This document shows, in pieces, positions 1,916 through 60,935 of a DNA stretch of 64,000 bases; position 1 is the first letter of the stretch; every line of letters starts with the position of its first letter. This stretch comes from Malacoraja senta. Its lineage: Eukaryota. The stretch covers positions 25,358,001-25,422,000 of the forward strand of contig CM075982.1 in NCBI GenBank assembly GCA_038087875.1, given 5' to 3'. Position numbers and translations under genes: made by a program. The notes beneath the pieces were generated by a model. It was not told where the DNA came from. It did not search any database and saw only the letters and a program-made list of their open reading frames with translations.

Positions 1916-2124
1916 GAATATAGATATAAAATGCTGGAATAACTCAGCGGTACAGGCAGCATATCTGGAGAGAAGGAATGGGTGACGTTTTGGGTCGAGA
2001 CCCTTCTTCAGACCCGAAATGTCACCCATTCCTTCTCTCCAGAGATGCTACCTGTCCCACTGAGTTACTCCAGCATTTTGTGTCTATCCTCGATTTAAAC
2101 CAGCATCTGCAGTCCCTTCCTACA
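1916..2124. mobile_element. Penelope-like short element, foldback (inverted) pair with hammerhead motif
   Basis: 76-bp arms at 1921-1996 and 2011-2086 with 9 mismatches. 15-bp TSD ctctgYttctttccc at 1901-1915 and 2125-2139. Nested in an older copy of the same repeat type. Confidence 0.8.
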
Positions 2125-4111
2125 CTCTGCTTCTTTCCCCACTGATATTGCCTAATATGCTGAGTACTTTGAGCATCTGCGGCTTTGTTGAGGAGTTATT
2201 AAGAAATTTGTAATTTAAAGTTTGCAGACTTTAAACAGTAGATATTGCAATGCAAGTGAATTGTATTTTAATCTCCCTCTCTCTACCCCCCCCCCCCCCC
2301 ACCGATGCTGCTCTCCTTGTTCTAAGAACATCAGTTGAGAAAAAGCAGAATTTGTCAAAATTTCCCTCAATTCAAGCAAAATCAAGAAACCATGCATTTT
2401 TTGCTATTGGCTAGGATTTGGAAATGAATTCTGAGATGCCACTAAGGGCCTCTCTTTCTAAAAGAAACCATGTTCTTTCCAGATTACCAAGTGTTCCTCA
2501 CTCTAATATATTCCTCATAAAACACCACTGTTCTCATTTTGTTACCTGTTCCTGTGATTTATGGGTTTAGTGTCAGCTATGTTGTTTATTGCTACTTTAA
2601 CTTCCACGTTGCCTTCCATCGGGCCCAGAATAATCCCAGCTCCTACTTTTACCACCTCACTCTTCAGGAGGCACAGTCTGTAGGGTTCATCTCACAGCTG
2701 GGGTGCAAGGTCAAAGGGGTCAGGCTTGTGACATGGGCAAGATTGTAAAAAGGATAGGGGTAAGATCATCAGGCCTTTGTTTTCATCTTGGCCACACCAG
2801 CACTTGTATTTATGTGGCAGGTTTAGCTGAATTTCGGATCAATTGTAATCCACCCCAGGGCATTGAGAGTTGCGGACAAGGCTTTGAGTATTAATGGTAG
2901 GTAATCAATAAATATTGGAGATGGTCAATGTTTGACATATTTGTGGCACAAATGTAATTGACCATATACTATACAATGCCTGAATGTTAGAAACAAGGAA
3001 TTGCAGAAGCTGGTTTACAGAAAAAAGACACAAAGTGCTGCAGCAATTCAGTTGGTCATGCAGCATCTCTGGAGAACATGGATAGGTGACATTTTGGGTT
3101 GGGACCCAGGAGCCTGAATAGTATATAGATCCTGTTGCATGCAGGCACTGAATCCTTTATTAGCTGAGAAGCTGCAATTGAAATTGAATGTAGTTAAATC
3201 ATCAATGAATATCCCTGCCTCTGATGATGGATGTTGTAAGGTCACTGAAGAAGCTTATGACACAGTCCCAAGGAACTCTTGCTGTGATGTCCAGGGGCTG
3301 GTTTGATTGGTCTTCGACAACTACAATCTTCTTTTCCCCTTTTATGCGCATTGTTTCAGTTCAGCTATGGTATCCTGATCCCACATTTGGTCAAATGCTT
3401 CTATGATATTAAAGGAGGTCCCTTTAACCAACCCCTAGAATTCAGCTCTTTGGTCCTTGTTTTCATCAAGATTGCCATGAGGTCTGAAGTCATGTTCTCA
3501 GCAAAAGCTAAAATGGACATCAGTGAGTAGGTCAAGGAATAGGAGTAGAATTAGGCCATTCGGCCCATCAAGTCTACTCCGCCATTCAATTATGGCTGAT
3601 CTATCTCTCCCTCCTAACCCCAATTCTCCTGCCTTCTCCCCATCACCTCTGACACCTGTACTAATCAAACCATGTTATTGATGAATAAGTGCTATTTGAT
3701 TGCACTGTCAATTAAGGCAGTCATCACTTTGCTGATAAGTGTAGATGGAATGGGTGTAATTAGTCAGATTGGATTTGTCATGTATTTTGTGAAAATGGGA
3801 CATAATTGGTCAATATTCTGCATTGTCCAGCAGATTATCCTATTGGAACTGGAGTGCAGATCTTTAGTACTACAGTCTGGTTCCCTCATGTTTGCCGTAC
3901 TCAGTGCCCTCTTCATTTCTTGATATCATGTGAAATGGCTTGTATGATAATGTGGGGCTTTCAAGAGGAAGCAACATTTCTGTTCAGCATGATTGAATGC
4001 TTCATCTTTTCTTTAGCATTCACGTGCTGGATCCTACTGTTGTTGAGGATAGGAATGTTCTTGGAGCCTCCTCCTCAGGTTAGCTACTTAATTACCAACA
4101 ATCACAAATAG

Positions 4112-4330
4112 ACTTCTCCAAAATCAGGTAGTCCTTGCTTTCTCCCTCCTTCCCCTCCCCTTCCCAGCTCTCCCACAGCCCACTGTCTCCGCCTCTTCCT
4201 TTCTTCTACCCGCCCCCCCACCCCCACCCCCACATCAGTCTGAAGAAGGGTCTCGACCCGAAACGTCACCTATTCCTTCGCTCCATAGATGATGCCTCAC
4301 CTGCTGAGTTTCTGCAGCATTTTTGTCTAC
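4112..4330 (+). mobile_element. Penelope-like element 3' end (pyrimidine-rich UTR, hammerhead, tail)
   Basis: Begins with an ORF-end remnant (ttctccaaaatcaggtag, compare FSNFR*). Then a C/T-rich tract, gtctgaagaagggtctcgacccgaaacgtcacc, and the family tail. Confidence 0.8.
4238..4270 (+). ncRNA. Minimal type-I hammerhead ribozyme motif, intact core
   Basis: CUGAAGA (4240-4246), A, stem II GGGU-cucg-ACCC, GAAA, palindromic AC-GU stem III, GUC triplet ending at 4267. Stem I is only 2 bp (GU/AC). Confidence 0.7.
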
Positions 4331-7882: not shown

Positions 7883-9364
7883 TTACACTCACAATCTGTA
7901 TTAAAATTATCTGTATTAACCATTCCTCAGCCCACCTGCCCACTGATCATGATCCTCCTGCAATTTTTGATAACTATCTTCGCGCCCTATGATGCCACCG
8001 AATTTAGTGTCATCTGCAAACTTACTAATCTTGCTTTGTACTTATTGATATACAATATTATTTGATTTGGAATGGAATGGAATACTTTATTGTCACATGT
8101 GACTAGGCACAGTGAAATTCTTTGCTGCATACCCAATGTATACAAATTTGATTGGATACCACATAAAACAAAGCTTTTCACTGTACATCAGTACACGTGA
8201 CAATAATAGACATAATCCCAAACACCCCACCAGTGCCCCTAATGAATATAGAGCCCTCAGCAACTTCTCATTTCTTCACTTTGCATCCGTATCTCATACT
8301 ATACCCATCTTTGTTCCTATCCTTTGGTCTCCTGATGCCGGAGTCCTGAAACTTGCTAGGTTCTATGCAAATAACATCAAATTGTACCTATCTGTCCACC
8401 CCAGTTCCAGGCTACTGCAGGTCTCTCTGACTTGAAATGCTTTGCACAACTAGTTTTTCAGGCCATGGATTCTAGTAGTTTACATGCTCAAGGTCACAAT
8501 CACTAGCTGTACACAATGTCCTGCAAAATCAGCAGACAGCAATGATAGAATGGGGACAGTGGAGCTTACTGTATGCATTTGAAGCTCATATACTTTGCAA
8601 TATACTTTGCAACTGCACTGTCATTCTGCAGTATATTAATAAAACACTTGTCAATCTCATCGTAATTACTCTAAAGTGTTAGGAGATGAATTTGCACTTC
8701 CCAGTCCCTCAAGCTTTGGGTTCCTGTTCTCTATTAGACAACATTGCACCAAAAAAGGTTAACTTTTAATAAATCAGAATGGAAGATCCTGCCAGATCGA
8801 TCTCTCTACTTCAAATGCCAATTTGCTGCATTTAGAATCATGGAGATAAAGAGTCATACAGTACAGAAACAGGCCTTTAGGCCGACCAATTCTATGCTAA
8901 CCATCAAATACCTAACTATATTAATCCCATTTGGTCCAATCTTGAAGATAGATCCCAACCTGAAACGTTGTCTGTCCGGTTCCCTCCAGATGTCGCCTGA
9001 CTCCTGAGTTCATCCATCAGTTTGTTTTGTTGCTCAAGATTACAAATCTGCAGTGTCTTGTGTTTCCAGTAACCTATTATGCCTTAGCGATTCAAGATGC
9101 TAATCCAAATGCTTCTTAACTCGTAACTTTTGTGAGAGTTTCTGCCTTCATCACCTTCTCAGGCAATGTGTTCCTGGTTGCAACCATCTAAGTGAAATAT
9201 TATTCTCCAGATTTCTTCTAAACTCCTCACAATTCTCTCTATCTTAGACATTTCTGCAATGGGGAAATGGTTCTTACTACTACTCAAACTATGCCTATCA
9301 TAATCTGGTATACCTCTCTCAGGTCCCCTATCAGCCTCCTCTCCTCCTCAGCTGATACCTCACA

Positions 9365-9612: not shown

Positions 9613-9847
9613 AGAAAACAAATGAAACATAATAGGTTGGAAAACACAAACTGCTGGAGGAACTCAGCAGGTCGAGCAGCATCTGAGGAGGAAAAGGAAT
9701 GGTAGATGCTTCAGGTAGAAGCCCTGCAACAGGACTGAGAACGAAGAGGAAAGATAGTCAGCATGAGACAGGAACCACTTTATTCAAGACAGTAACTGAA
9801 AGACTTTTCCTTGGACCCACACCTAAAACTGTCTCTCTCACCTAATT

Positions 9848-11180: not shown

Positions 11181-11230
11181 TCAAATCATAAAAGGCACCT
11201 CAGAAATATATATATTTTTTACCAAAGGAT

Positions 11231-11321
11231 GTCTGACGAAGGGTCTCGACCCGAAATGACACCCATTCCTTCTCTCCAGAGATGCTGCCTGTCCCGCTGA
11301 TTCACTCCAGCATTTTGTGTC
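11231..11321 (+). mobile_element. Penelope-like short copy with mutated hammerhead
   Basis: gtCTGACGAaGGGTctcgACCCGAAAtgacacccattcc...; stem III and the cleavage triplet are altered. Confidence 0.8.
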
Positions 11322-11339
11322 CTCTGCGCTCTGATTCCT

Positions 11340-12675: not shown

Positions 12676-13907
12676 ATTAACCTAATCATAGAAGAGATTT
12701 TCCAAGAAAGCTTGTTAATTTGCAGTTTCAGCCTGTTGAATGAAGAATGAAGAATGAAGAATGAAGAACCTTTACTCCCAACAAATCTCAGCCTCCTACT
12801 GAATCTGAACCACCTCATCTCCTCCTCCACCTTCAAACACCATCTTCTCCCACATCTGATTTTAGCACTCCCATCCATCCAATGGTGGTGATTATATCCT
12901 CTCTCCCCTCCCCATTCCATCTCCCAACCTGCTAACCTGCATTGTTAAAGGCTAAAGTCTATAAACATAGAAACATAGACATAGAAATTAGGTGCAGGAG
13001 TAGGCCATTCGGCCCTTCGAGCCTGCACCGCCATTCAATATGATCATGGCTGATCATCCAACTGGCCAAGCCACTGAGTTCAATATAACCTACGTGCGTG
13101 TCCAGGTACATTTGGTGCTCTTATTGTATAGTCCTCTGGAGATCCAATGTGGGAGATGAATGGGAAACTTCAATGTTGAGTCTGTCAAGTTTAGCTACAG
13201 TTTATGTTAACAGACTCTATTTTACAGGTTAACTTCGTCATTATCCAAACATTACTTCAAAGTGCCAAAGACTTAAAGCACATAGTATGAATGCTGACGT
13301 AGTTTATTCCGTGGCAGCAATCTAATTCTCTGTGAAAGTTAGTGAGTGGTGTCAGAAGAACCTTTTAACCATGATTGAACACTCTATTTTAATGCTGTCA
13401 AAGTCAGAACTACCAGCCAAAGATCAGTATCTGCTCTTTGCTCAGTAAAGGAAGATTTGCATTTATATAGCATATTTTAGAACCGCAGGAGATTCTATAA
13501 TGCACCTACAGCCACTGGAAACCCATCAGTAGTTATATGATAATAGCCAGATAGTTTATTTTTGAGATATTGACCGAGGGATGAACATATGTTTGAACAC
13601 CAAGGACTCTTGGTCCTTGACAAAGTAGCATCTGAAAAAGCAGATAGGTTTTACTGTAATGTTTTAATTGAAAGATGATTTTTCTGGTCTTTTTATATTT
13701 CTCCTCTCTAAATCTAATACTATCCCCAATTTATTTTGAAATCCATGGTTAAGCCACCTTTCTGATTTTATTTACATTATGGGACTACTTTTATTACTTC
13801 ATCCCTCTTGCAAGAAATGCCAACAATGTAATGATTATTTACTTAACCATGTTTCTTATAAGAAGACATGCAGATCCCACAACCTCACACAATTTGACCA
13901 CTACTTT

Positions 13908-14400
13908 GGAGACACAAGGACCATAGATGCTAAAATCATGAGCAAAACACAAGCTACTGGAGGAACTCAGCGGATCAGGCAGCATTTATGGATGGAAATG
14001 AACAGGCAATGTTTTGGATGAGGACTTTTCTTCAAGACTGGAGTAGAGGGGAGATAGCTGGTAGAAAGAGGTGAATAGAAGGGGTCAAGGGCTGGCAAGT
14101 GATAGGTGGATCCAGGAAACAAGGGGTTGGTTGGCAGATGAATCAGGTGGTGGAGATGATGGAGGTGATGATCACAAAAGATTAAAGTGCAGAAGATAAA
14201 AGGATGCAGAGGGTGAAATCTGAGAAGAAAGGAATGCGAGTAGTGAAATGTAAAAAGCAGGGGGGAGGGATAGTTGCTTGGAATAGGAGGAATAGAGGAC
14301 TGGTGGGGGGGGGGGAGGTAGGGGTGGGTGATAAGCAGAAGGAGGAGGTGGAGGAAGTAAAGGAAACTGGGATGACAGAGCAGGGGGAGAGTATAGAAAG
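13908..14400 (-). mobile_element. Penelope-like element 3' end, older
   Basis: Family tail, degenerate hammerhead at ~14010-14038, and a long purine-rich tract that is pyrimidine-rich on the minus strand. Confidence 0.65.
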
Positions 14401-16245: not shown

Positions 16246-17745
16246 TCTGAGCCATACAGCACAGAAACCAGCCCTTTGGCCCAGCTCATCCATGTCGACC
16301 AAGATGCTAGTCCCACTTATCCGCATTTGGCCTATACCTCTTCAACTCAATGGTATGAACATTGAATTCTCCAATTTTAGGTAACTACAAAACTCTCACC
16401 CTCTCTCTTCTTCCTCCAACTCCTCCCCCTCCCCCTCCCCTGTGCTACTGGACTTGCACCTATTTCTTCCCTTCCCCTCCTCTTCCCTTCCACCTATATT
16501 CCTTCCTCTAGCTTCACAATTCACAACTCTTCAATTATTTTGTCTCACACCTTCTGTCTCTTCACCTCTGGTCTTACTCCACCATCTGCCGATCAAGAAA
16601 ACCCCACCTGTTTCAACATAACCTGCCAGGCTTTGTCCTGCCCTTCCTCTCTTCCAGCTTTCTTCCTCCCCCTATATTCAGTTAGAAGAAAGGTCCTGAC
16701 CCAAAAGGTCACATACATGCTTTCCAGAGATGCTGCCTGACCCGCTGAGTGACTCTAGCATTTTGTGTCTTTTTTCTTACCCAGCATCTTCAGTTTCTTG
16801 TATCAAAATCTCCCTCTAAACCTTTTCTACCTTTATACCTATCCAAATTTCTTTTAAATATTGTTTTATATACCTGCCTAAACTATTTCCTCCGGCAGCT
16901 CGTTCTATGTGAAAAAGTTGCCCCTCATGTTCCTATTAAATCTTTCCCTCTCACCTTAAACCTGTGCCCTGTTTCTTGATTCCCCTACCCTGGGAAAAAG
17001 ACTCTGCACATTCACCCTATGCATTCCACTCATGATTTTATTCACCTCTAGAGGTCACCGCTCAGCCTCCTGCATTCCACGGAATAAAGTCCTAGCCTGT
17101 CCAAATTCTCCCTATAGCTCTGGCCCTTGTGTCCGAGCAACATTATTGTAAATCTTCTCTGTACACTTGCCAGCTTAATGGTATCCTTCATATACCAGGG
17201 TGTGCACAATTGAACACAATACTCCAAGTGCAACCTCACAAATATCTTGTACATCTGTAACATAATGTCTCAACTTCTATACTAATTTCCCTGACTGATT
17301 AATGCCAAAAGCCTTCTTCACCACTCTATCTATCTATTACACCACTTTCAGAGAATTATACACTTGTATGCCTAGACTTCTTTGCTCTCGAATGCCCTAC
17401 TGTTCACTGTAAAGGTCTTGTCCTGGTTTGACTTCCCATAATACAACATCTCATACTTATCTGCATTAAACGCCACCAGCCATACCTCGACCCACTTGCC
17501 TCACTGATCAAGATCCCCTTGTATTTCTTGATATCCTTCCTCAGTCTACGAAACTACTTAAGTTAGTGTCATCAGCAAACTTACTGATCATGCCTTGTAC
17601 ACTCTCATCCAAATCGTTGATATGGATGACAAACAGCAATGGGCCCAGCACTGAAGCCTACAGTTCGTCACAGATCTCCAGTTCGTAAAACAATTCTATA
17701 CCACCACCCTCTGTTTCCTACCACAAAGCTAGTTCTGTATCCAGT
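16246..17745 (-). mobile_element. CR1 LINE 3' fragment interrupted by a PLE
   Basis: ORF 17048-17263 reads LHLEYCVQL...LGLYSVECRRLSGDL. Minus-strand FADD near 17570. Confidence 0.85.
16338..16803 (+). mobile_element. Penelope-like element 3' end
   Basis: aatggtatgaacattgaattctccaattttaggtaa encodes NGMNIEFSNFR*, the same ORF end as at 25334-25369. Then pyrimidine UTR, degenerate hammerhead at ~16681-16712, and tail. Confidence 0.8.
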
Positions 17746-17899: not shown

Positions 17900-18635
17900 A
17901 TTTTGATTTGGGCGCAGAGCAGTACGGAGGGAATGGTACACCGTTGTATTGCCATCTTTCTGTTTATTCTCAAATTTGAAGGAGAGCAAGGAGTTCTTCT
18001 TGTGTAGGAAAGAACTGCAAATGCTGGTTTAAATCGAAGGTAGACAAAATGCTGGAGTAACTCAGCGAGTCAGGTAGCATCTCTGGAAAGAAGGAATGGG
18101 TGACCTTTCGGGTCAAAAGCCTTCTTCAGACTGTCTGGGTTAAGACGTGGTCGGAGAGTCGGAGAGAAGGAGGATTCACAGAGGGGGAGCAGTGAGAGAG
18201 GATGTTGCTGAACTCTCATCGGAGAGAAGAGGAGAACTTCTTCAAAGTAGACATACCTTGAGGAGATTTTGCAGTGGAGCAGACAAAATGTGTAGGAAAG
18301 AACTGCAGATGCTGGTTTAAATCGAAGCTAGACACAAAATGCTGGAGTAACTCAGCGGGTCAGGCAGCATCTCAGGAGAGAAGGAATGGGTGACGTTTCG
18401 GGTCGAGACCCTTCAGTTCTTCTTGATGTCCTGGGTATTATTTATCCTTTCATCAAACATCACGAAAAATTAATTATCAGGTCATTATCTCTTTGTCATT
18501 ATGAGAGTCTTCTGTGCAAAACATTGACGCTGTGATTTTTAATATCGCACAGTAAACACACTTAATGGGCTATTAAGTGTTTTTGAATGTCCTGATGTGA
18601 TGAAAGTTACTATAAAATACAAATCTGATTTCTTT
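17900..18635 (+). mobile_element. Old Deu-domain SINE (SacSINE1-like) hosting a PLE insertion
   Basis: Contains gagcaaggagttct...atgtcctgg...atttatcc...aacatcac...ttatcaggtcattatc...tataaaatacaaatct. Related fragments occur near 5260, 13450, 19915, 23560, 29550, 31110, 38200 and 47460. Confidence 0.6.
18003..18414 (-). mobile_element. Tandem Penelope-like mini-element with two hammerhead-bearing repeats
   Basis: Two ~125-bp direct repeats whose hammerhead cleavage sites are 290 bp apart. Perfect 11-bp TSD agttcttcttg at 17992-18002 and 18415-18425. Confidence 0.85.
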
Positions 18636-19699: not shown

Positions 19700-19900
19700 T
19701 ACAAAATACTGTAGATGCATCTGTAGCAAAATAGAAAACTGCTGGAGGAGCCCAGTGGGTCAGGCAGCATCTGTGGAAGAAATAGTCGACGTGGAAGAGT
19801 CTATGTATAGGGTCTCAGCCTAAAATGTTGGCTGTCCATTTCCCTCCAGAGGTACTGCCTGATTCACTGTGTTCCTCTAGCAGCTCTCCCTTTTTGCTCA
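19700..19900. mobile_element. Penelope-like foldback pair, degraded
   Basis: tgctggaggag...tcaggcagcatctgtgga followed by its reverse complement tccagaggtactgcctga...cctctagcag. Confidence 0.6.
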
Positions 19901-24535: not shown

Positions 24536-24667
24536 GTGTAGGAAAGAACTGCAGATGCTGGTTTAAATCGAAAGTAGATCACAAAATGCTGGTGTAACTC
24601 AGCGGGACGGGCAGCATCTCTGGAGAGAAGGAATGGGTGACGTTTCAGGTCGAGACCCTTCTTCACA
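24536..24667 (-). mobile_element. Penelope-like short solo copy (132 bp)
   Basis: Perfect 10-bp TSD aggttatgac at 24526-24535 and 24668-24677. The element edge cuts the hammerhead core (TGAAGA...GAAACGTC). Confidence 0.85.
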
Positions 24668-24739
24668 AGGTTATGACCTTCGATTGACATGCCCCTGGTT
24701 CTTTTTTCCATTCAAGTTAGGCACCCAATTATCTTGGAC

Positions 24740-34666: not shown

Positions 34667-34857
34667 GATACTGCAGATACTGTTATGTTGAGCAGAAAAA
34701 AAAATTGCTGCAGGAGCTGAGTAGGCCAGGCAGTGTCTGTGGAGGGAGATGAATAGATTGTGTTTCGGGTCAGGACCCTTCTTAAATCTGAGGATGGGTA
34801 CTGGCCTGAAATATTGTCTCTCCATTTCCCTCCATGGATGATGCCAGACCTGATAAG
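34667..34857. mobile_element. Penelope-like foldback pair with back-to-back degenerate hammerheads
   Basis: gtttcgggtcaggacccttcttaaa|tctgaggatgggtactggcctgaaa; the arms are complementary. Confidence 0.65.
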
Positions 34858-36182: not shown

Positions 36183-36295
36183 AGTATAGAAAGAAGGAAC
36201 TGTAGATGCTAATTTACAAAAAAATACACTAATTACCAGTGTAACTCAGCATCTGGAGAGGTGCTGCCTGACCCGCTGAGTTACTTGGTGTTTTT
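36183..36295. mobile_element. Penelope-like foldback remnant
   Basis: Perfect 14-bp TSD tcttctaaaagcca at 36169-36182 and 36296-36309. Family tail sequence in both orientations. Confidence 0.75.
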
Positions 36296-41920: not shown

Positions 41921-42129
41921 GAGCCCTTATTTACTTGCTGGGCTGCAATGTTGGTGGGGAGGGATTTTCCACAATGTGCTACCTCTGGTTTTAATATAAA
42001 ACTGTCATATGAAATTTCAGTCACACAAATAATAGCCACTCTTTCATTGGCACATGGTCCGTAATTTTATGGATAGAAATCTTGTAAAACCTTATCCAAT
42101 GGTCTTGGAGGAACACCTTCACCATTTAT

Positions 42130-42270
42130 AATAACAAGGGACTGCAGATGTGATGTGATGTGTTTATACCAACAACAGACACAAAATGCTGGAGTAACTC
42201 AACAAGTCAGGCAGCATCTCTGGAGAAAATGGTTATGTGACGTTTCGGGTCAGGACCCCTCTTCAGACTC
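42130..42270 (-). mobile_element. Penelope-like short solo copy
   Basis: Family tail plus intact hammerhead. The element ends about 4 nt beyond the core. Confidence 0.8.
42237..42268 (-). ncRNA. Minimal type-I hammerhead ribozyme motif, intact core
   Basis: Minus strand reads gu-CUGAAGA-G-GGGU-ccug-ACCC-GAAAC-GUC-ac, core at 42239-42266. Confidence 0.7.
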
Positions 42271-47182: not shown

Positions 47183-49879
47183 TCTAGGACCAGAGGGTTC
47201 AGCTCAGGACATCGCTTAAGAATGGAGAAGAGGAATTTCTTTAGGGTGGTGTATATGTTGGAATTCATTGCTACAGACAGCTGTGGAGGTTAAGTCATTG
47301 GGTACTTTTAAAGTGGAGATTGATACATTCTTGATTAGCAAGCGTGTCAAACATTATGGGGGAAAGGCAGACTAGGATTGAGAGGGAAAACAGATCAGCC
47401 ATGATGGAATGGGCCAAATGGCCTAATTCTGATCCCATGTCTTATGATCTTACACATCCACCATGAAATGCCCAGAAGTTATTTTTAAAACCAAACTTGC
47501 TGTTAATTATGGGGCACATTTTGGTCCAAACCCCTCACCCTCCCCACCCCTTCAAAATAGTAGCATAGGATATTTAAATGTCTCTGAGATGATAAGCAAA
47601 GGTCTTATCTATCCTTCCAGCTGAAAGATAAAGCCAGCACAGCACTCAATTTCTGGTATTACATTGCCTGTTTTATCTGGCTTAGTTTTTGAAGTAGGAT
47701 TTTACCCCATAGATCCTACCCAGCGAGTCACAGGCTGCTATTAATGTACAGAAGTACTGAGTCTTTGCTTTGACAACTTGGAACACCACAGTATTGATTC
47801 ACTTTCTCTGCAGCTTGTTACGGGTACCTCTTGATACTGATGGTAAAAGTGAGGTACACGCTTTCTCTTTTTTGACAGGTGGGGCAATTACATGCTAACA
47901 GCTACTTCGAGCGTTATGCAACAGCTCCAATGTACACTGGCATCATCCCAGCACAGAAAAATGCACTCAGATTAAATTTATAGTCAGAATGCAGGATAGC
48001 CTTGGGGAGACTGGCTCTGGCTCACGTATAACCACATGGCAGTTGCCATGTGTTGATTTGTAATCCTTGTAATAATAATCTACACCATGTTAGATTGACA
48101 GCATCAATCTCACACACCCACACAAATAAAACCAAGATTGTACCAGCTTTGGAAGAAAAAGTGTCCAAAAAAAAAGGGTCTACACTGAGCATCCAGGTCC
48201 ATCACTGGAACTCTGGCCCATTCCCACTCCGACTTCAGTCTACATTGCTCCAGAGCACCTGGAAGAAACCCACGGTTACTGGGAAAACATGCATCAGGGG
48301 TCAGGATTGAACCAGGGTCTCTGGCATTGTGAGCAAGCAGCTCTGAGCTATAATGTCAACTTTGTTTCTCCATTGAAGCCGCCCAACCTGCTGAGTCCTT
48401 TTAACATTTTCCATTGTTTCAGATTTCCAGCACCTGCTGTTTTTTGCTCCAGGCTCTCGTGGTCCTGACAGGGTGAATGTGGGGAAGAAACCTTTCATAG
48501 AAGACTACAATAAAAAAAATGTTAATTTTTCTTTACCTTTCCGGAGGATCATAAGTTTTTGAAATTCTCACAATGCAGTGGAAGCACGTCACTGAATGTT
48601 TTCAAAATGGGTGTAAAGATACGTGAAAGACTCAAAAGTAAACAGGACTGTGGAGTTGATGATCCATCATCTTATTAAATGATAGAGCAGGCATGAGGGA
48701 CTGAGTGGTCAAGTCTTGCTCCTGATTCTTATGTTTATATCAGATGTTTAGTGACACTTCTCTCAGCTAGATGCAAAATATCTCATAGTGATAATTAAAA
48801 GCCATGGAATTCACTACACTGTAATCTAGCTATGTCAGTAAAAGAAAATACAAAACTTTGTTAATACAAGTTAACTACCACTCTAACTTGTGGCTCTCTC
48901 AAATCCATACAAACACAAGAATTAGGATAGAACAGTAGGGTAGTTCTGGTTACCAGACTACAGCAAGGATGAAGAATTATTCTAAAGATGGGTGCCAATC
49001 TAAAACATCATCCATCCATGTTCTTCAGAAATGCTGCCTGACCCGCTGAATCACTCCAGCACTGTGTGTTTTGTCAAGTTGCACCTGCAGTTCCATGTTT
49101 CTACATGATTCCATGATACTTTATGGACTGTTACATGACAGCCCCTCCCCCCGTACATTATTTGTAAATAAAAGAACGAGAGACTGGATTGAGTTTAAGG
49201 TAAATGAAAAATGTAGGATTAAAACATTTCCACATGCACGCATACTTTCCTGTAGGAGGGGCATTCTGACCACAAACAGGTATGGTACACACCATGTTTT
49301 GTTTAAGAGTGAAACCCAGGCATGATTTATAATTACATCCAAACGGTCCAAGTGCACAGTGGCTAGGACCACACCCGCTATTAGAGCTCAATGCCTATAA
49401 AAATGTGTGGCCACATTACCTCAGGTCCGTAAGGAAACATCTGGCTCCACTGGTATATTTATCTGCAAATAGTTCCAAAGATTTCTGGAAGCCAGAACAA
49501 ATTACTGATTTCCATCTCCATTTTGTGATTACAAGAGGCTGATGATTTCAGTGTTGCATTTCCATGCGAGGTCTTGCTTTGAATTCAATGATTCAGAAGT
49601 AATGTGCTGTCAGGGTGCCATGTTGGCCAATGTTCTCGCCAATTCTGCTCACCTACATTATTGCTGTTTTGTGGGATTTCTGTGAAAAGTAGCTGTTCAT
49701 TTGCAAACACAAAACAATTTTCCCCACAAGCCACTGAGGAGTTCTCTGCGGACACAAAGCCTCACACAAATAAAATGTTTCCTTTCTTAAAACCCATTAA
49801 CCCTTCATTTTGAGCTAAAAATGTTCCTAGGTCCACTGGAAATTATACCCACCCCTTCCCAGAAACAGCAGACTCGTAA

Positions 49880-53225: not shown

Positions 53226-56200
53226 TTCAACCCCCACTTCTGTTCCCCCTCTGCAAAGCAGCGCTGAGCCTCCACGGTTGCTTTACTGCTGCAGATCCCC
53301 AGGTCATGCCCTTGAACATTAAGCAAATGTTACGAATCACCAAGCATTTACCCCAAAATTGAACACCAAAAGAGCCAAATGCAGCAGGTCACAAACTAAT
53401 GTTCACTGAATTGCCTCTTTTTTTAATGTAATAAATAACATTGTCCAAGTTTACACACACTTTGGGCCAGATACAATAGTGTGAAACATCCATGGAACAG
53501 GATCTCAGCAAGTACAGAGTTTCTTCAGAGGTGGGACGTGCAAATCAGCTTTCACATTTGCCTACATTAATACTGAATGTACTGTCCAAACAATAGACTG
53601 CAAAATAATTTGCATTTATAAAGTGAATCCCCCACAGGAGTGTATTCAGAATAAAATGGCCATTGAGCTAAGAGAAAAACAAAACTTGTTTTAGGTTACA
53701 GTCATTTGACCTTCCGGGTCCATGCCAGATCCCAGTGGAGTAGTTTTCTTGTAGCACCTTTCACAACCTTAACACATTATACAGCCTTTGAAGTATTTCT
53801 GAAGGATAGCCACTGATGTAATCTTGGAGAGAGAGAGGTAGATTTCAAGGAACCTTACAGAGACAGATGTTGTTATATGGGGATCTTGTGGGATAAACTC
53901 AAAGTATGTTAAAACTGGTATGAAGGAGATCAGGTCAGAGATGACGAAAATTTTTTAGAGGATGGAAGGCTAGCAGTAAATTACAGGGAAAATGAATGGG
54001 AATGAGAATTTTATAAACATTGACATTAGCAGAATGGGATTCACTATAGGCCAATAAATAAAGGGATGGCACGAGTAGGATTTGGCGAGTTATGATAAAC
54101 GGCAGCAGAGTTACATGACTTCAGGCCAGACCCCAAGGCCAATGTTAGAGGCACTGATGAGGGTTTCAGCATCAGATACAAGGAGCAGGGATACAGCTGG
54201 GTTATATCACTGGATAGGTAATTGAAGCCCAGATCCTGCTCAAATAGGAGAGCATGGTTGTGAACCAATTTGATCTAGTTTGGTTGGAGCAGCATGAAAA
54301 GTGTGTGGCAGAGGCTTTAATTTGTGTGTAAATGAAGGAGATTTTGAAACATTCAAAACCAAGGTTGACAAATAAAAGCCTCAAGAAACTGCAGATGCTG
54401 GAATCTTGTGGGTCAGGAATCTGTGGAGTGTCTGGACAGGCTATGCTTCAGGTTGGGGCTCAAGTCTGGGACAATTATCAGCAAACATGTGGAGCATGAG
54501 GAGTTTTCTGATGATGCTGCCAAAGAGGAAGCATGTTGATGGGAAATGAGAAAGCAGCAATGCTAGGGCCTGGGCAGATACTGCAGGAGTGGGAAAGGAA
54601 CCATTGCTGAAGATTCACTGGCAATGAACAACTAGATAAGAACGAGAGCAGTTCTGAAGAAAGCTTTACACTCAAAATGTTTCTCCCTCTACAGATGCTG
54701 CCTGACTTGCTGAGTATATTCTATTTTCATTTCAGATAAGATAGAGCTTGTATGGACAGTACAAACGCAAGCTGGAAGATGAGCTGCATGTCAGGAGAAC
54801 AATGTCAAGTCGAGAGGCAATGAGAGCATGGGCTCACACAGTGCCACTCAGCTGGAAGACATTGATCCAACTAACAGAAAAGTAGGGAACAGGGAAAATT
54901 ATACGCCTCCATCATATTTGCAGGTAGATTATGCTATTTGGATGAGGGCCATTTCCATACCGTAGCTGGGTAAAAACTATACTGAAGTGATTTAAACCCA
55001 CCATTGTAAGAAATATTGGTCAATTTAGGAGGCTACAACAAATTCAAGGCTGTTGTTTGAGGAAGAGGATGGAAAGGGCAGATACCAAAGTGGGAGCCAC
55101 AGGGAAACAGAATAGGGAACCACAAACATCAGCTAGCATGGGGGAATTTTCATTGGTGGCAGACTACAGGAAAGGTTGGCAGGTGATCAATAGTTTTGTG
55201 ACAAAAGAAAGTGGGATCTCACCCGATAGGTGAAAAATCTCAAACTTGGTGACTGATGCTCATGAGATTTTCCCATTTCGGAGTTGAGGATGCAAGGGAA
55301 GGGTGTAAAAGGACTACATACAGGGACAAAAAAAGATGGTTATCTTTTCACCATTTCAAGGTTATGATGGATTGTGTGTAATTGTTTAGCTTGAGTGCAA
55401 GAACGTGTTTGGAAAGACCTGGCTATGCAACACAAGTGCTTGAATGCGAGTTTGTTGGTGTTAAAAAGCATTATTATGGGGTATTTACCAAGGGCAACAA
55501 CTGGTAAAGGAGAGCTTAAGGATTTGACTGAAGACAAGACAAAGCACAAGGCCAAAAGTCACATCATTCGAACTACAAGCAGTGCGCTGCATTTGAAAGT
55601 GCTATCAAAGTGTCTTGAAGGAGCAGTTTTCTCCACTTTTTAAATGCATTTCTAAATGTTACAAAAACATCACAAAATCTTTTTTCAGCATGTTGGATGG
55701 TGTTGGGCAGTACAGGAGCTTAAAATAATCATGAGGAGCTGTCACTTACCGCTCCATTTTTTCTCCAATGACAAAATTGGCACTTTCAGAAATACCCAAG
55801 TCACCTGGTTAAAGAAAAAAAATCTCAATTTTCTTCCGGAGACACAAACTTCACTATTCATCAGGCAGGTAGATAGAGAGGAAAGTGGGTCATGAGCACT
55901 CCTGTAGCTCGAAAAGGTCAGCACAACTTGGAGGCACATCCCATGGGGGCAAGGACACAGCCAGAGACACTCACTGCTCACACAGTAGCAGCAGCCTCTG
56001 TTCCCACTTTTTTACATTTACACAAAATGCTGAATTGGTCAGCAGAAAATATTAAATCCCCCTCCTGTTTCAATCAACCTTTTACTTCTGTACAGCTGTC
56101 AAGTAACCAGGACAGCAGCTTCCCAGCAAATTGTGCAAAATGACTCCAGTAAATCCACCTTTTATAACATCTTCCCATGCTAAGCAGAGCTGCTGCAGGT

Positions 56201-58208: not shown

Positions 58209-58770
58209 AGATACAAGGGACTGCAGATGCTGGAATCTTGAGTAAAATAGAGTTCTGGACGAACTCGGAATCAGGCAGAAATGTCTGTATCCATCCATAG
58301 ATGCTGCCTGACCTACAGAGTTCCTTCAGCACTTTTTTTTGTTGCTCATTTTGCAGATTCAGGCAGTCACCACACCTCCTTTTAAAGAGTGATGCTCTAT
58401 TTTCATTGATATGTCTGTCTTAATATGGGAAAAAAATTGCTGCACACGGCCCTGTTGTTAACCATTGAAAGGCAATTAGAAATCCACAGTGAAAATTAAT
58501 CAAGTTCAATCCAGTGCAGAAGCCTCCGAGCAGCTTGGGTCACACTCCCACAATACTATAACCTATCTGTTCTCATTACTGCCACCAACTGACCTTCGTG
58601 CACATTCAAAATGTAGAAACAAGGAACCACAGATGCTGGCTTACGCAAAAGGACATAAAGTGCTTGAGCAACTCAGCAGGTCAGGCAGCATCTCTGGAGA
58701 CAAACTGCTGCAGTAGCTCAGCAGGTCCAGAGATGTTGCCTGACCCACCGAGTTACAGCACTTTGTGCAA
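58209..58770. mobile_element. Two Penelope-like foldback remnants (58209-58347 and 58612-58770)
   Basis: Family tail in both orientations (tcaggcagcatctctgga ... tccagagatgttgcctga). Confidence 0.7.
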
Positions 58771-58947: not shown

Positions 58948-59091
58948 CTTCAGAGCTCTGAACTGCAGCATTATGAGTCACCACCTCTGTGGATATGCTT
59001 TCTTCCTGCTCATTCTCAGTATCACATTCGCTCTCACTATCAGTACTCATTCCAGGTAATAAACGAAGGATTGTCTTCTGAAGTGACACAG
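58948..59091 (-). CDS. TRIM37: TRIM37 penultimate coding exon
   Basis: Strong acceptor (T-run then cccccag), donor gtatgg. 144 nt, phase 1 to 1. Encodes AVSLQKTILRLLPGMSTDSESECDTENEQEES..., matching recalled human GMSSDSDIECDTENEEQEE. Confidence 0.88.
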
Positions 59092-60781
59092 CTGGGGGAA
59101 AAAAAAACAACGTTATGCATCGAGACTTCCCACCTGTGCAAAAGCAAGAGTCACCAAATACATAGATAATCAGGTACTAATTAAACTTTTGATTGTTGGT
59201 GTTAATAAACTCACAATTAGCTTACAGCTGTACAATGTACACATAAGCTGAAGCATCTGTAAGAAATGTTGTATGACAATAATGTGAATCAGATATCAGA
59301 GTAAATTAACAGCAAGACTCATAGTTTACATCCTCAAAATTTGACACGGTTACTCCAAAACAATTACATATCAACACAAGGTAGTTGAACCAACGGGTGC
59401 TCCACCTGCAGCGTTACATGACTTATAATCAGCTTATAGCTACAAATTATCTTCTGTCACATGGTAATGATTAATGATTAATGATGGCAATAATTAATAT
59501 GAATTACTATCATATTAATCAACTGAAGTTTTTTTTCACGTTACTTTTTGATGCATTGTCATTGAACATCGATATATCTATGAAAATTCTGACAGAATAT
59601 AGTAAACACCAGTTTCCCTGCATTAAGGTTATGTTCAAGAGGCCATGCTTAGTTGACAATTCATGGGAATTTATTGCCCAATCTGTGCGCAATATTAACA
59701 TAGTACAAGAACAAAAAAGCTACATTTTTATTTCCTGTAACATGTACAACATGAGCAATTTGCTTAATGCAATCAGCCTGAAGTGCCGGTGGAACTACTT
59801 GAACGGTTGCAAATTTCAAGGTGACATTTCCATATCCATTATGTTTGTGTTCTCCCTGCACAGGACAAGATGTTTTGGACATTTCAACCATGCTAATCTG
59901 AATGAGCAGTTGTTTACACCAGCATTGTTGTTTAATCAAACCCAGAGGACCAATGTGTAATAAATATGTCAAACCTTGGGACATATGGTGTGATGCATAG
60001 AGTTTTGGAAGAGGCATGTACAACCTAGCACTGATGGTGTTCAAAAGAGGCAATGGTGTGATTAGTGCAGGGTAAGTGTTTATGTTGAGTTAATTTCGCT
60101 TCCATACACTGTTACCTTCCAAGACAGCTTTTCTTCTGCACATCAATTTGCAAAGTAACTTTTAAATGGTTCTCGATTTCCTGACAGAAATTGTGTTATA
60201 ACGAATTTGCCCTAATACGAAGTGTTCCCCAATTTAGTCGTCTTACATCCAATTTGTGTAACATAGCAGAACTACCAGTATTTTAAAGAGGAACCTGGAT
60301 AACTGCTGGTCAGTCGGTCAAGAGGATTACAAGTTGCTTCAGGAAGGAGAAAACAGAATTAAAACATAGGATTTATGGGCATTTTCTCAGATTAAAAATT
60401 AAAATGGGTAGCTGATTCCCTTAAAAGTTCTGTTCTGGAAATGCTTCTGTTGAATGTGCGTTGTGAAGTGGACATGGAGCCTTGGGCAATAGCACACAAA
60501 TGTACAGACAATTCTGAAATAGAAGTCAGGGAATAATTTAAGACAAAAAGGAAGAGGAATGGGTAAAATTGTGTCAGATGCATTTCCATGTCAGAGCTTG
60601 AGGTTGCAACTCAGAAAATAATAAAAGCAATAAATATACTTGGAATGGAGGAAAGCTGCATGTTGCAAGGCTGTAGGGATTTACAGGCTCAGAGTCATAA
60701 TATCTTAAAAGCATTATCTGAATAGCCATTTAAACAGCCAAAAGAATTGACATTCTATAACAATAGGCCCTGAACATTGAA

Positions 60782-60935
60782 TGTTTAGGAAGGAACTGTA
60801 GATGATAGACACAAAATGCTGGAGTACTGCAGCAAGACAGGCAGCATCTCTGGATAGTAGAAATTGATAGAAGGAAAGTCACCCATTCCTTCTATCCAGA
60901 GATGCTGTCTGTCCCACTGAGATACTCCAGCATTT
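60782..60935. mobile_element. Penelope-like foldback pair
   Basis: aaatgctggagta...gacaggcagcatctctggatag paired with ctatccagagatgctgtctgtc...tactccagcattt. Confidence 0.75.

What the first reader, a model, noticed from the sequence alone, without database searches (positions are those of the whole stretch)
1916..60935. Abundant hammerhead-ribozyme-headed mini-retroelement family derived from a Penelope-like element
Seen: about 20 copies of one ~130-140 bp repeat. One end reads CTGANGA-N-GGGT-nnnn-ACCC-GAAAC-GTC-ACC. Cores are intact at 4240-4267(+) and 42239-42266(-). Cores with 1-2 changes lie at 1984-2011(-), 11233-11260(+), 18102-18129(-), 24638-24665(-) and 34052-34079(+). Stem II GGGT/ACCC is mostly kept while its loop varies (CTCG, TTCA, CCTG, TTTG), as expected for structural constraint. 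The same repeat terminates a GIY-YIG-coding fragment at 24740-25875. Established: PLEs carry minimal type-I hammerheads with a loopless palindromic stem III (ACGU) that cleave best as dimers. Inference: this lineage has a very high-copy, SINE-like, ribozyme-bearing non-autonomous family (about one copy per 3 kb here) mobilised by a Neptune-type PLE.
Basis: partly seen in the sequence, partly recalled or inferred. Interest (0 to 1): 0.85.

Follow-up and report, generated by a model that had tools for sequence, protein, structure and literature searches.

The report
Hammerhead-bearing tail ends of Penelope retroelements
The window's commonest short repeat is the last 95-135 bases of a Penelope-like jumping gene, which carry that element's known minimal hammerhead ribozyme motif; this is an unusually abundant case of a described phenomenon, not a new kind of element.

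Summary
The motif CTGANGA-N-GGGT-N4-ACCC-GAAAC occurs 8 times at up to 2 mismatches, against 0 expected. A profile search finds 33-36 repeat arms in about 25 insertion loci.

The repeat is not a separate SINE. On the + strand at 24721-25875, a Penelope-like element (PLE) reading frame is followed by a CT-rich 3' UTR, a decayed hammerhead and the same tail. Copies at 4114-4330 and about 16343-16802 also start in the last codons of that frame.

The loci show the published PLE insertion signatures:
- variable 5' truncation;
- two alternative 3' ends about 40 bp apart (the "tail");
- 8 head-to-head inverted pairs, each a single insertion where duplications could be read;
- target-site duplications of 8-15 bp.

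Eleven of 27 arms that do not run on into the UTR start within a few bases of (A)GTCTGAAGA, just before the ribozyme. Contigs of related species show the same hot spot and some head-to-tail tandems. I read this point as the 5' end of the element's transcript; a self-propagating mini-lineage is not excluded.

Only two hammerhead cores are fully intact, and there is no covariation. Cleavage could not be tested. First readers noted the same family in other windows of this genome. Overall this is a known kind at very high copy number.

The parts
24721..25369 (+). Decayed C-terminal part of a PLE reading frame: the RT-EN linker with PCNARRSNICPY, then the GIY-YIG endonuclease, ending ...GMNIEFSNFR with stop TAA at 25367-25369. 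It has frameshifts and stops.
   Evidence: Three-frame translation. The 87-aa piece finds 39 relatives. P0016 and P0036 carry RVT_1 plus a C-terminal GIY-YIG. The pieces are collinear with P0016 residues 579-646, 679-701 and 721-793. tblastn finds no other PLE coding fragment in the window. Pfam itself does not hit the window pieces.
25370..25875 (+). The same old element's CT-rich 3' UTR (25370-25755), followed by its decayed hammerhead and tail (25756-25875).
   Evidence: Sequence read; nhmmer hit at model positions 4-132, E 9e-12.
24537..24667 (-). Young mini copy of the long form, nested in the old PLE fragment. Its hammerhead has C3>G and C11.1>T.
   Evidence: 10-bp target-site duplication GTCATAACCT abuts both ends; nhmmer E 3e-39.
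4114..4330 (+). 5'-truncated PLE copy. It starts in the last reading-frame codons, runs through about 120 nt of CT-rich UTR to a fully intact hammerhead at 4240-4267, and has the short 3' end.
   Evidence: 11-bp duplication CACAAATAGAC at 4103 and 4331; motif with 0 mismatches.
16343..16802 (+). 5'-truncated PLE copy: reading-frame end (motif at 16355-16383), about 300 nt of CT-rich UTR, a decayed hammerhead at about 16683, and the long 3' end. The 5' limit is approximate.
   Evidence: Reading-frame-end motif with 2 mismatches; sequence; nhmmer.
18002..18415 (-). Single insertion of more than one unit: hammerhead to tail, then a 154-nt body (18133-18290, with AAG|GTATGT and a CT-rich end), then hammerhead to tail again.
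   Evidence: 9-10 bp duplication AAGAAGAAC(T) at both ends. The body is itself high copy in the contigs of three runs.
1916..2124 (.). Head-to-head inverted pair inserted as one event. The left arm (-) has the short end and its hammerhead at 1987-2011 has G12>A. The right arm (+) carries the roughly 40-bp tail.
   Evidence: 15-bp duplication CTCTG[T/C]TTCTTTCCC; nhmmer arms 2014-1907(-) and 2008-2128(+).
36183..36295 (.). Head-to-head inverted pair. Both arms are truncated downstream of the hammerhead, and the tail is on the left arm only.
   Evidence: 14-bp duplication TCTTCTAAAAGCCA.
34048..34143 (+). Mini copy of the short form that starts AAGTCTGAAGA. The hammerhead boxes are intact but helix III reads ACAU.
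   Evidence: 11-bp duplication CT[T/C]AACCTATC; motif with 0 mismatches.
42125..42269 (-). Mini copy that starts AGTCTGAAGA, with a fully intact hammerhead at 42239-42266.
11230..11320 (+). Mini copy of the short form that starts at the hammerhead in an AT-rich flank. In the core, C15.2>T and U16.1>A.
2986..3111 (-). Copy truncated inside the CUGA box, long form.
   Evidence: 8-bp duplication ATTCAGGC; nhmmer.
28453..28564 (-). Copy truncated downstream of the hammerhead, with tail.
   Evidence: 9-bp duplication CTTTCAGGT.
8940..9061 (+). Old mini copy that starts at the hammerhead.
   Evidence: nhmmer E 4e-13; flank read.
9636..9735 (-). Old copy with CT-rich UTR upstream and the short end.
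13904..14038 (-). Old copy with CT-rich UTR upstream and the long end.
19700..19884 (.). Head-to-head inverted pair.
   Evidence: nhmmer arms 19791-19700(-) and 19809-19884(+); sequence.
21567..21807 (.). Head-to-head inverted pair.
   Evidence: nhmmer arms 21700-21567(-) and 21696-21807(+).
34657..34857 (.). Head-to-head inverted pair. The hammerhead-like site at 34762-34786(-) has 2 mismatches.
48343..48450 (+). Old truncated copy.
   Evidence: nhmmer E 5e-5.
48981..49103 (+). Old mini copy that starts at the hammerhead.
   Evidence: nhmmer E 2e-24; flank read.
54386..54461 (-). Old truncated copy.
   Evidence: nhmmer.
54642..54733 (+). Old mini copy that starts near the hammerhead.
   Evidence: 8-bp duplication AGATAAGA; nhmmer.
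58212..58379 (.). Head-to-head inverted pair; its tail is a sequence variant.
   Evidence: 9-bp duplication TTTTAAAGA.
58613..58767 (.). Complex locus: a partial head-to-tail joint on the - strand plus an inverted + arm.
   Evidence: nhmmer hits 58727-58698(-), 58699-58613(-) and 58726-58767(+); sequence.
60786..60935 (.). Head-to-head inverted pair with the tail on the left arm only.

Best explanation
The repeat is the 3'-terminal segment of an endonuclease-bearing, Neptune-like PLE. It runs from the element's minimal type-I hammerhead to the place where its reverse transcriptase starts copying.

**Shown here.**
- The order on one strand is reading frame (GIY-YIG end), CT-rich 3' UTR of 110-385 nt, hammerhead, about 65 nt, an optional tail of about 40 nt, then the end of the insertion.
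- Copies are separate insertion events with duplications of 8-15 bp.
- 5' ends vary, with a hot spot 2-3 nt before the CUGA box.
- 3' ends fall at two sites.
- Many loci are head-to-head inverted pairs with the tail on one arm.

**Inferred from published PLE work.**
- The element is transcribed from its terminal repeat (pLTR).
- Its endonuclease nicks A/T-rich DNA on one or both strands.
- Reverse transcription starts internally at either of two neighbouring sites on the RNA. That would give the short and long 3' ends, and priming on both strands would give inverted pairs.
- cDNA synthesis either stops early (truncated copies) or runs to the RNA's 5' end.

**My own inference.** The hot spot (A)GTCTGAAGA is that RNA 5' end. 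TCAGTCT fits an initiator consensus.

**Role of the ribozyme.** Copies that begin at the hot spot keep the whole hammerhead, so their templates had not been cleaved. The ribozyme therefore rides along rather than defining the ends of the copies. It would act, if at all, as a dimer or with protein help on multimeric transcripts. Genomic copies then decay neutrally.
For: **PLE identity.**

**Collinearity of reading-frame end, UTR, hammerhead and tail.** It is seen in three window copies and in a little-skate-assembly locus, L001.

**Target-site duplications.** Ten insertions have them, three of them inverted pairs and one a copy of more than one unit.

**Inverted pairs.** There are 8 adjacent head-to-head pairs and no tail-to-tail pairs, p = 0.004. 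In 6 of the 8 the tail is on one arm only.

**3' ends.** Relatives' contigs end at two places, 18329-18332 and 18288/9. Flanks beyond the short end are A/T-rich.

**5' hot spot.** 11 of 27 arms that do not extend into the UTR start within a 5-nt window, binomial p = 1e-9. Loose ends at 4237/4238 with random AT-rich flanks appear in four runs. The same start occurs in L001.

**Published matches.**
- Minimal hammerheads in pLTRs, mostly as single truncated copies and also as opposite-strand pairs (PMC4209133).
- 5' truncation, an adjacent inverted copy and a 30-40 bp tail at one end (PMC8557442).
- Two internal RT start sites that explain the tail, both strands cleaved and extended, and a hammerhead not needed for insertion (PMC11167929).
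- Transcript start inside the pLTR (PMC6765202).

**Conservation between subfamilies.** Two subfamilies show 0 of 25 fixed differences in the hammerhead against 8 of 52 downstream, p = 0.036.
Against: - No full-length element is in the window, so the reverse-transcriptase domain and the 5' half of the unit are unseen. The position of the transcript start is inference only.
- Helix I is weak: 2 contiguous pairs in the sense context, and 55% of cells paired.
- There is no covariation.
- The monomer's lowest-energy fold is not the hammerhead.
- No Rfam hammerhead family matches, even at E = 10.
- No RNA data were available, so neither cleavage nor the transcript 5' end is shown.
- The hot-spot class, the head-to-tail tandems of 82-94 and 126-127 bp units in relatives' contigs, and the 154-nt-body insertion could instead reflect a self-propagating non-autonomous lineage.
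Confidence: 0.8

Rival explanations
1. One reading: the 95-135 bp units that begin at the hammerhead are a dedicated SINE-like non-autonomous family. They would be transcribed from their own copies through a promoter lying downstream of the start site. The PLE's reverse transcriptase would copy them in trans because they carry its start site.
For: - There is a sharp 5' end hot spot at (A)GTCTGAAGA in the window, in L001 and in relatives' contigs.
- The youngest, most similar arms in the window are mostly minis or pairs.
- No reading-frame-bearing copy of the young subfamily is in this window.
- Penelope is reported to have a promoter internal to the transcript (PMC8557442).
- Non-autonomous PLE derivatives are described (PMC8557442, and bioRxiv 10.64898/2026.07.22.740005).
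Against: - The young subfamily includes a UTR-bearing copy (18132).
- The same segment ends reading-frame-bearing copies.
- About half of the hammerhead-reaching boundaries in relatives' contigs continue into CT-rich UTR.
- The truncated, inverted and tail-variant forms are what the autonomous element alone would give.
- There is no pol III head and no evidence of transcription.
Confidence: 0.17
2. A retrozyme-like cycle. Tandem mini-units would be transcribed, cut by dimeric hammerheads into RNAs of about 90-130 nt, circularised, and copied by rolling-circle reverse transcription. The dispersed monomers would be dead offspring.
For: - Head-to-tail joints are seen in relatives' contigs: 4331>4238 (94 bp), 18414>18325-18333 (82-90 bp) and 18414>18288/9 (126-127 bp), in tens to over a hundred contigs per run.
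- Non-LTR retrozymes are reported to derive from PLE pLTRs, with consensus lengths of 51-972 bp, and to occur in one chondrichthyan species.
Against: - The window holds no tandem array of the unit.
- Unit boundaries lie at the hammerhead start and the RT start sites, not at the GUC cleavage site.
- Such joints amount to only about 2-3% of the contig ends (3' ends) listed at the same sites. PLEs also insert next to one another.
- No RNA data were available.
Confidence: 0.08
3. The hairpin-shaped loci are fold-back DNA transposons (MITE-like) that merely contain a hammerhead-like string.
For: Several loci are near-palindromes flanked by direct duplications.
Against: - The arms are unequal, and their junction falls at different model positions in every pair.
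- The outer ends are always the two RT start sites.
- Duplication length varies from 8 to 15 bp.
- Single arms far outnumber pairs.
- The arms are collinear with a PLE 3' end.
Confidence: 0.02

Closest known systems
Minimal hammerheads in the terminal repeats of Penelope-like elements (Cervera & de la Pena 2014, PMC4209133; Lunse, Weinberg & Breaker 2017, cited in PMC6765202)
   Same: - The CUGANGA and GAAA boxes, the extra base after A9 and the G10.1-C11.1 pair.
- A loopless palindromic helix III (ACGU), so dimer action is expected.
- Location in the non-coding end of a PLE.
- Thousands of mostly solitary copies attributed to truncated PLEs, plus pairs on opposite strands.
   Different: - Stem II is 4 bp here, against 7-8 bp in the schistosome families.
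- Helix I is very short.
- Copy number appears far higher than the 4,000-9,000 reported for coelacanth and Xenopus: a window density of about one arm per 2 kb, and contig depth about 1e6-fold over single copy. Both figures are rough.
Neptune clade of endonuclease-bearing PLEs (as summarised in PMC8557442)
   Same: - A C-terminal GIY-YIG.
[quoted passage not shown]
- A vertebrate host.
- The hammerhead near the 3' end.
   Different: - Only a decayed C-terminal fragment is present here.
- The middle cysteine of the linker motif is mutated.
- No phylogeny was done.
Poseidon PAc of Anolis (Frangieh et al. 2024, PMC11167929)
   Same: - Two neighbouring internal RT start sites downstream of the hammerhead would explain the two 3' ends and the optional 30-40 bp tail.
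- Cleavage and extension of both DNA strands would explain head-to-head pairs.
- The hammerhead is dispensable for insertion and uncleaved RNA is the main template. This fits copies that keep the whole ribozyme.
   Different: - In PAc the hammerhead overlaps the start codon. Here an ATG 20-odd nt after the cleavage site is conserved, but the frame is closed in the commonest subfamily.
- It belongs to a different clade.
- Nothing was tested biochemically here.
Non-LTR retrozymes of animals (Cervera & de la Pena 2020, PMC7229834; Li, Clavereau & Pollet 2026, bioRxiv 10.64898/2026.07.22.740005)
   Same: - Short non-coding units with a type-I hammerhead.
- Derived from PLE terminal repeats.
- Occur as monomers and tandems.
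   Different: - In this window the copies are dispersed or inverted, not tandem.
- Their ends are the RT start sites and a putative transcript start.
- No circular RNA evidence.
Schistosome Sm-alpha / Sj-alpha SINE-like elements with hammerheads (cited in PMC6765202)
   Same: A short, abundant, dispersed retroposon that carries a hammerhead.
   Different: - Those have a pol III promoter ahead of a canonical hammerhead with helix III.
- Here there is no such head, and the hammerhead is the minimal PLE type.

Membership tests
Penelope-like element (endonuclease-bearing) | C-terminal GIY-YIG endonuclease in the single reading frame | tested here: met
   The window piece 25031-25291 aligns to the GIY-YIG region of P0016 (41% identity, E 9e-15 pairwise). 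P0016, P0036 and P0027 hit Pfam GIY-YIG. Pfam does not hit the decayed window piece itself.
Penelope-like element (endonuclease-bearing) | Telomerase-like reverse transcriptase upstream of the endonuclease | tested here: inconclusive
   The window fragment is truncated before the RT. tblastn with five relatives finds only residues from about 680 onward. The relatives P0016 and P0036 do carry RVT_1.
Penelope-like element (endonuclease-bearing) | Insertion signatures: 5' truncation, partial tandems (pLTR), an adjacent inverted 5'-truncated copy, and a 30-40 bp tail at one end | tested here: met
   There are variable 5' ends, 8 head-to-head pairs with the tail on one arm in 6, an insertion of more than one unit at 18002-18415, and two 3' ends about 40 bp apart.
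Penelope-like element (endonuclease-bearing) | Hammerhead motif in the terminal repeat, on the sense strand | tested here: met
   The hammerhead lies 110-385 nt after the stop codon on the reading-frame strand, in 3 window copies and in L001.
Neptune clade | [quoted passage not shown] | tested here: inconclusive
   The window reads PCNARRSNICPY (C-x4-S-x2-C), aligned to PCGRPRCKTCAH of P0016. P0036 has PCGRPRCNTCDY. The motif is shared with Nematis.
Neptune clade | Placement in an RT/EN phylogeny | not tested
   There was no reference set of named clades and no RT in the window.
Minimal type-I hammerhead ribozyme of PLEs | Core boxes CUGANGA and GAAA, U16.1-H17 cleavage site, correct spacing | tested here: met
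   8 matches against 0 expected. The cores at 4240-4267 and 42239-42266 are fully intact. Per-position conservation: G8 1.0, A6 0.94, A13 0.96, A14 1.0, N7 0.72.
Minimal type-I hammerhead ribozyme of PLEs | Bulged base after A9, G10.1-C11.1 pair, palindromic 15.2-16.2 without a loop | tested here: met
   The consensus is CTGAAGA-A-GGGT-N4-ACCC-GAA-ACGT-C. At 10.1-11.1, 11 copies have G-C and 3 have G-U, of 18.
Minimal type-I hammerhead ribozyme of PLEs | Helix I of about 4-6 bp between the flanks | tested here: not met
   Only U2.1-A1.1 and G2.2-C1.2 pair in sense-context copies. 55% of cells are paired over 4 positions. A 4-bp helix I appears only in inverted-pair copies.
Minimal type-I hammerhead ribozyme of PLEs | Covariation that supports the helices | tested here: not met
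   Covariation score 0.100 against 0.103 in shuffles; 78.2% of cells paired against 77.1%. RNAalifold predicts no hammerhead. This is a small sample of decaying copies.
Minimal type-I hammerhead ribozyme of PLEs | Self-cleavage after GUC | not testable with these tools
   Only assembled contigs were available, with no RNA runs.
Rfam hammerhead families | A score against a curated covariance model | tested here: not met
   No hit at gathering score in the window and none at E up to 10 on 4190-4310. This is plausible for a motif without a helix III hairpin.
SINE | Pol III promoter head derived from tRNA, 7SL or 5S | tested here: not met
   ARAGORN finds no tRNA-like sequence in the window. The 5' end of the unit is the hammerhead itself. 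7SL and 5S heads were not searched for separately.
SINE | Discrete 5' end and a 3' end shared with the partner autonomous element | tested here: inconclusive
   11 of 27 arms that do not extend into the UTR have a discrete 5' end. The 3' end is the PLE's own. Other copies are truncated or extend into the UTR and reading frame.
Non-LTR retrozyme | Tandem units that each carry a type-I hammerhead | tested here: inconclusive
   There is none in the window. Head-to-tail joints do exist in relatives' contigs.
Non-LTR retrozyme | Unit-length circular RNA | not testable with these tools
   No RNA runs were available.

The most novel reading that the evidence does not exclude
The units of about 95 or 135 nt that start at (A)GTCTGAAGA may be a self-sustaining mini-retroelement. 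Each would carry a transcript start with a downstream promoter, a dimer-dependent hammerhead and the PLE reverse-transcriptase start hairpin. It would have amplified to the order of 1e5-1e6 copies in skate-like genomes, partly through tandem, retrozyme-like intermediates. That would make this the most hammerhead-rich genome known and the smallest PLE-dependent non-autonomous element.
Probability: 0.17. Interest if true: 0.6.

Novelty: new member of a known kind. Interest (0 to 1): 0.3.

Why it matters
- **Annotation.** The family should be labelled as PLE (Neptune-like) terminal fragments. It is not a SINE, a MITE or a new ribozyme class.
- **Abundance.** If the rough figures hold, this lineage carries far more minimal hammerhead motifs than the genomes in which they were first counted. 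The figures are about one arm per 2 kb here, similar counts noted by first readers in other windows, and roughly 1e6-fold contig depth.
- **Mechanism.** The large number of TSD-delimited insertions gives a natural record of PLE biochemistry: two RT start sites, priming on both strands, and run-off at a fixed 5' end. This can be compared with the single in vitro study.
- **Ribozyme role.** Run-off copies keep an uncut hammerhead. That argues the ribozyme does not make the template ends, which bears on the open question of what PLE hammerheads are for.

Tried and rejected
- **Rfam.** No hammerhead family hit at gathering score on the whole window or at E up to 10 on 4190-4310. I take this as a limit of the models, which may need a helix III hairpin, not as evidence against the motif.
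- **Pfam.** The three decayed reading-frame pieces gave nothing. Identity was obtained through relatives instead.
- **Structure prediction.** RNAalifold and pair counting on 19 copies gave no predicted hammerhead and no covariation. Single-sequence folds had z-scores from -1.5 to +0.6. The lowest-energy folds pair the CUGAAGAAGG box with the downstream CCUUCUYUCCAG instead.
- **RNA evidence.** No run on record as RNA holds the stretch, and all runs laid were contigs. Cleavage sites and transcript starts could not be read.
- **First reading of 24537-24667(-).** I first took it for the inverted partner of the reading-frame fragment. I rejected that after finding its own duplication and its much lower divergence.
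- **Joints from 3620-3668 to 4234-4239 in relatives' contigs.** I judged these to be cross-matches of CT-rich sequence, not part of the element.
- **"Opposite strands" joints between 18288/9 and 18329-18333.** Left uninterpreted. The tail is partly complementary to the AGATGCTG segment.
- **Search for a full-length relative.** L002, a 3.3-kb contig with the 816-aa frame, is from a distant organism and shows no clear hammerhead. The P0011 locus had no DNA available. In L001 the gene model P0002 is a chimera of a LINE-type RT and a truncated PLE endonuclease.
- **MITE or fold-back transposon reading.** Rejected; see the rival explanations.

Full report

Yes. The pattern CTGANGA-N-GGGT-N4-ACCC-GAAAC has 8 matches at up to 2 mismatches on both strands, against 0.00 in 100 dinucleotide-preserving shuffles.

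- blastn of 4100-4400 against the window gives 19 copies that share about 95 bp, starting just before the CUGA box.
- A profile built from 15 copies finds 36 hits, 33 of them at E below 1e-3, in about 25 loci. That is roughly one arm per 2 kb.
- The unit is about 95 bp or about 135 bp long, depending on which of two 3' ends is used.
- Sixteen of the 33 arms are truncated inside the repeat and lack part or all of the ribozyme.
- Only 4240-4267(+) and 42239-42266(-) keep every core position.

**2. What the repeat belongs to**

On the + strand, 24721-25369 is a decayed reading frame with frameshifts and stops. It ends ...GMNIEFSNFR followed by TAA.

- Pfam does not recognise the decayed pieces.
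- An exhaustive HMMER search with the 87-aa piece finds 39 relatives.
- Two of them, P0016 (816 aa) and P0036 (891 aa), carry RVT_1 followed by a C-terminal GIY-YIG.
- The three window pieces are collinear with P0016 residues 579-646, 679-701 and 721-793.
- tblastn with five relatives finds no other coding fragment in the window.
- The linker reads PCNARRSNICPY against PCGRPRCKTCAH in P0016. That is the CX2-5CxxC motif that marks the Neptune and Nematis clades (PMC8557442), with its middle cysteine mutated here.

Downstream of the stop on the same strand come a CT-rich UTR (25370-25755) and then a decayed hammerhead and tail (25756-25875). The same order of reading-frame end, CT-rich UTR, hammerhead and tail recurs three more times:

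- At about 16343-16802, where the reading-frame-end motif has 2 mismatches.
- At 4114-4330, which starts in the last codons and has an 11-bp target-site duplication.
- In a locus of assembly GCA_028641065.1, L001, with an intact hammerhead whose stem II keeps pairing through a U.G wobble.

So the repeat is the element's own 3' end.

**3.

The well-preserved copy at 24537-24667(-) does not terminate the GIY-YIG fragment.

- It lies on the other strand.
- It is much less diverged than the fragment's own tail.
- It is flanked by its own 10-bp duplication, GTCATAACCT.

It is therefore a young copy nested in an old one.

**4. Insertion anatomy**

Target-site duplications of 8-15 bp delimit ten insertions:

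| Insertion | Note |
|---|---|
| 1916-2124 | inverted pair |
| 2986-3111 | single arm |
| 4114-4330 | single arm, reaches the reading-frame end |
| 18002-18415 | more than one unit |
| 24537-24667 | single arm, nested |
| 28453-28564 | single arm |
| 34048-34143 | single arm |
| 36183-36295 | inverted pair |
| 54642-54733 | single arm |
| 58212-58379 | inverted pair |

Eight loci are adjacent inverted pairs.

- All are head-to-head, with the 3' ends pointing outward, and none is tail-to-tail (p = 0.004).
- Where duplications are readable, they flank the whole pair, so a pair is one event.
- The junction falls at a different model position in each pair.
- In six of the eight pairs, only one arm carries the extra 40 bp or so (consensus CCTTCGATTTAAACCAGCATCTGCAGTTCTTTCCTACAC).

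Locus 18002-18415(-) is one insertion with a 9-10 bp duplication. It holds hammerhead to tail, a 154-nt body, then hammerhead to tail again, so it is more than one unit.

These are the published signatures of PLE insertions:

- Heavy 5' truncation, partial tandems that form pseudo-LTRs, an inverted 5'-truncated copy next to the 5' end, and a 30-40 bp tail at one end (PMC8557442).
- The in vitro work on an Anolis Poseidon element found two neighbouring internal RT start sites whose spacing is the tail. It also found that both DNA strands are cleaved and extended, and that AT-rich DNA is preferred (PMC11167929).

I infer that priming on both strands produces the head-to-head pairs.

**5. Evidence from other genomes**

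Contigs of the source organism's run and of related organisms were laid on two stretches. All organism names are coded.

- Single-copy flanks have summed depths of about 20-60, while the repeat core reaches 17-65 million. The tool warns that this is not a copy number. I use it only as a rough sign of 1e5-1e6 copies, which agrees with the window density.
- Contig similarity ends at 18329-18332 (short 3' end, followed by A/T-rich unrelated sequence) and at 18288/9 (long end).
- At the 5' side, loose ends pile up at 4234/4235, where CT-rich sequence continues. These are UTR-bearing copies of other subfamilies.
- In similar numbers they pile up at 4237/4238, where random AT-rich sequence follows. 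These are true ends.
- Head-to-tail joints of 82-94 bp and 126-127 bp units occur in tens to over a hundred contigs per run.
- The 154-nt body of locus 18002-18415 is itself repeated. Its depth falls from 1.9 million next to the tail to 30,000, against 33 for single copy.

**6. The 5' hot spot**

In the window, 17 arms reach the start of the model.

- Six continue into CT-rich UTR.
- Eleven stop within a few bases of (A)GTCTGAAGA.
- The other 16 arms start at scattered internal positions.

Eleven of 27 non-extending arms inside a 5-nt window has binomial p of about 1e-9. L001 shows the same starts.

My preferred reading is that this point is the 5' end of the element's RNA.

- PLE transcripts are known to start inside the pseudo-LTR (PMC6765202; PMC8557442).
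- The conserved TCAGTCT fits an initiator consensus.
- Reverse transcription that starts at the nearest start site, 95 or 135 nt downstream, and runs off the 5' end would give exactly these units.

This is inference, and no RNA data were available to test it. The same CT-rich tract plus CAG also resembles a 3' splice site. In Drosophila virilis Penelope an intron ends at helix I of the hammerhead. However, mini copies carry no upstream exon.

**7. The ribozyme itself**

The motif has the features listed for PLE minimal hammerheads: a bulged base after A9, a G10.1-C11.1 pair, and a palindromic ACGU with no loop (PMC4209133).

Conservation across 33 arms:

- The core is high where not CpG: U4 0.88, A6 0.94, G8 1.0, A13 0.96, A14 1.0.
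- N7 is 0.72 and loop II is 0.52-0.70.
- The CpG positions are low, including the catalytic G12 (0.67) and the helix III CG (0.54 and 0.65).
- The downstream block at model positions 48-92 is as well kept as the core, mostly 0.87-0.97. Its AGAGAUGCUG/CAGCAUUUU stem is paired in 84% of cells.

Structural tests:

- There is no covariation: score 0.100 against 0.103 in shuffles.
- Helix I is only 55% paired.
- RNAalifold predicts no hammerhead.
- Monomer folds are no more stable than shuffles.

So genomic copies decay neutrally.

At the level of source elements there is a weak signal. Two subfamilies show 0 of 25 fixed differences in the hammerhead against 8 of 52 downstream (one-sided p = 0.036). 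N7 is A, U or C in different copies.

Copies that begin at the hot spot keep the whole ribozyme, so their templates were uncut. No 5' ends at the cleavage site appear among the best-supported contig ends. This agrees with the in vitro finding that the hammerhead is not needed for insertion and that uncleaved RNA is the main template.

**8. Comparison and verdict**

Everything structural matches a canonical endonuclease-bearing PLE, probably Neptune-like, and its known minimal hammerhead.

- The 2014 paper already reported thousands of such motifs per vertebrate genome. Most were solitary and attributed to truncated PLEs, and some were pairs on opposite strands.
- Non-autonomous pLTR derivatives (non-LTR retrozymes) are also described, including in one chondrichthyan species.
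- What may be new is quantitative: the extreme abundance of this lineage and the sharpness of the 5' hot spot.
- I could not consult Dfam or Repbase.
- First readers noted the same family in at least eight other windows of this genome. Those notes are leads, not evidence.

I file the finding as a new member of a known kind and rate its interest as modest. A self-propagating mini-element is the most novel reading still open, at about 0.17.

Noticed in passing
window 3520-3668: This is a different very high-copy repeat (AGGCCATTCGGCCCATCAAGTCTACTCC...CCTGTACTAATCAA). It is cut off at 3668 here, and its summed contig depth is about 3-5 million against about 46 for single copy. In other genomes it continues as GAATCTATCTATCTCTGCCTTAAAAATATC.
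   Followed up: no
window 18133-18290 (-): The 154-nt body between the two hammerhead units has splice-like signals: AAG|GTATGT 33 nt after the tail, and a CT-rich tract ending CTTAACCCAGACAG just before the next hammerhead. It is itself repeated at least about 900-fold in relatives' contigs. It could be a retained intron or an internal-deletion derivative.
   Followed up: partly
window 4241-4290 and other copies: The catalytic box CUGAAGAAGG is complementary to CCUUCUYUCCAG about 30 nt downstream. Lowest-energy folds pair them, which would hide the ribozyme core in monomers.
   Followed up: partly
L001 7806-8711: The public gene model P0002 is a chimera. A LINE-type reverse transcriptase (…FADD…) runs in frame into a 5'-truncated PLE GIY-YIG end, so its RVT_1 hit is not the PLE's RT.
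   Followed up: partly
protein P0001: This 5,520-aa predicted protein matches the 87-aa endonuclease piece in 36 separate stretches. It is probably a gene model called across an array of PLE fragments.
   Followed up: no
window 15726-15800: A CT-rich tandem tract (unit CCCCCTCTCTCCC) resembles the PLE's 3' UTR, but no hammerhead arm follows it within several hundred bases.
   Followed up: no
window 16260-16342 and 16803-16860: The PLE copy at about 16343-16802 sits inside another dispersed repeat (…CATCCATGTCGACCAAGATGC…CCGCATTTGGCCTATACCTCT / …CTCCCTCTAAACCTTTTCTACC…).
   Followed up: no
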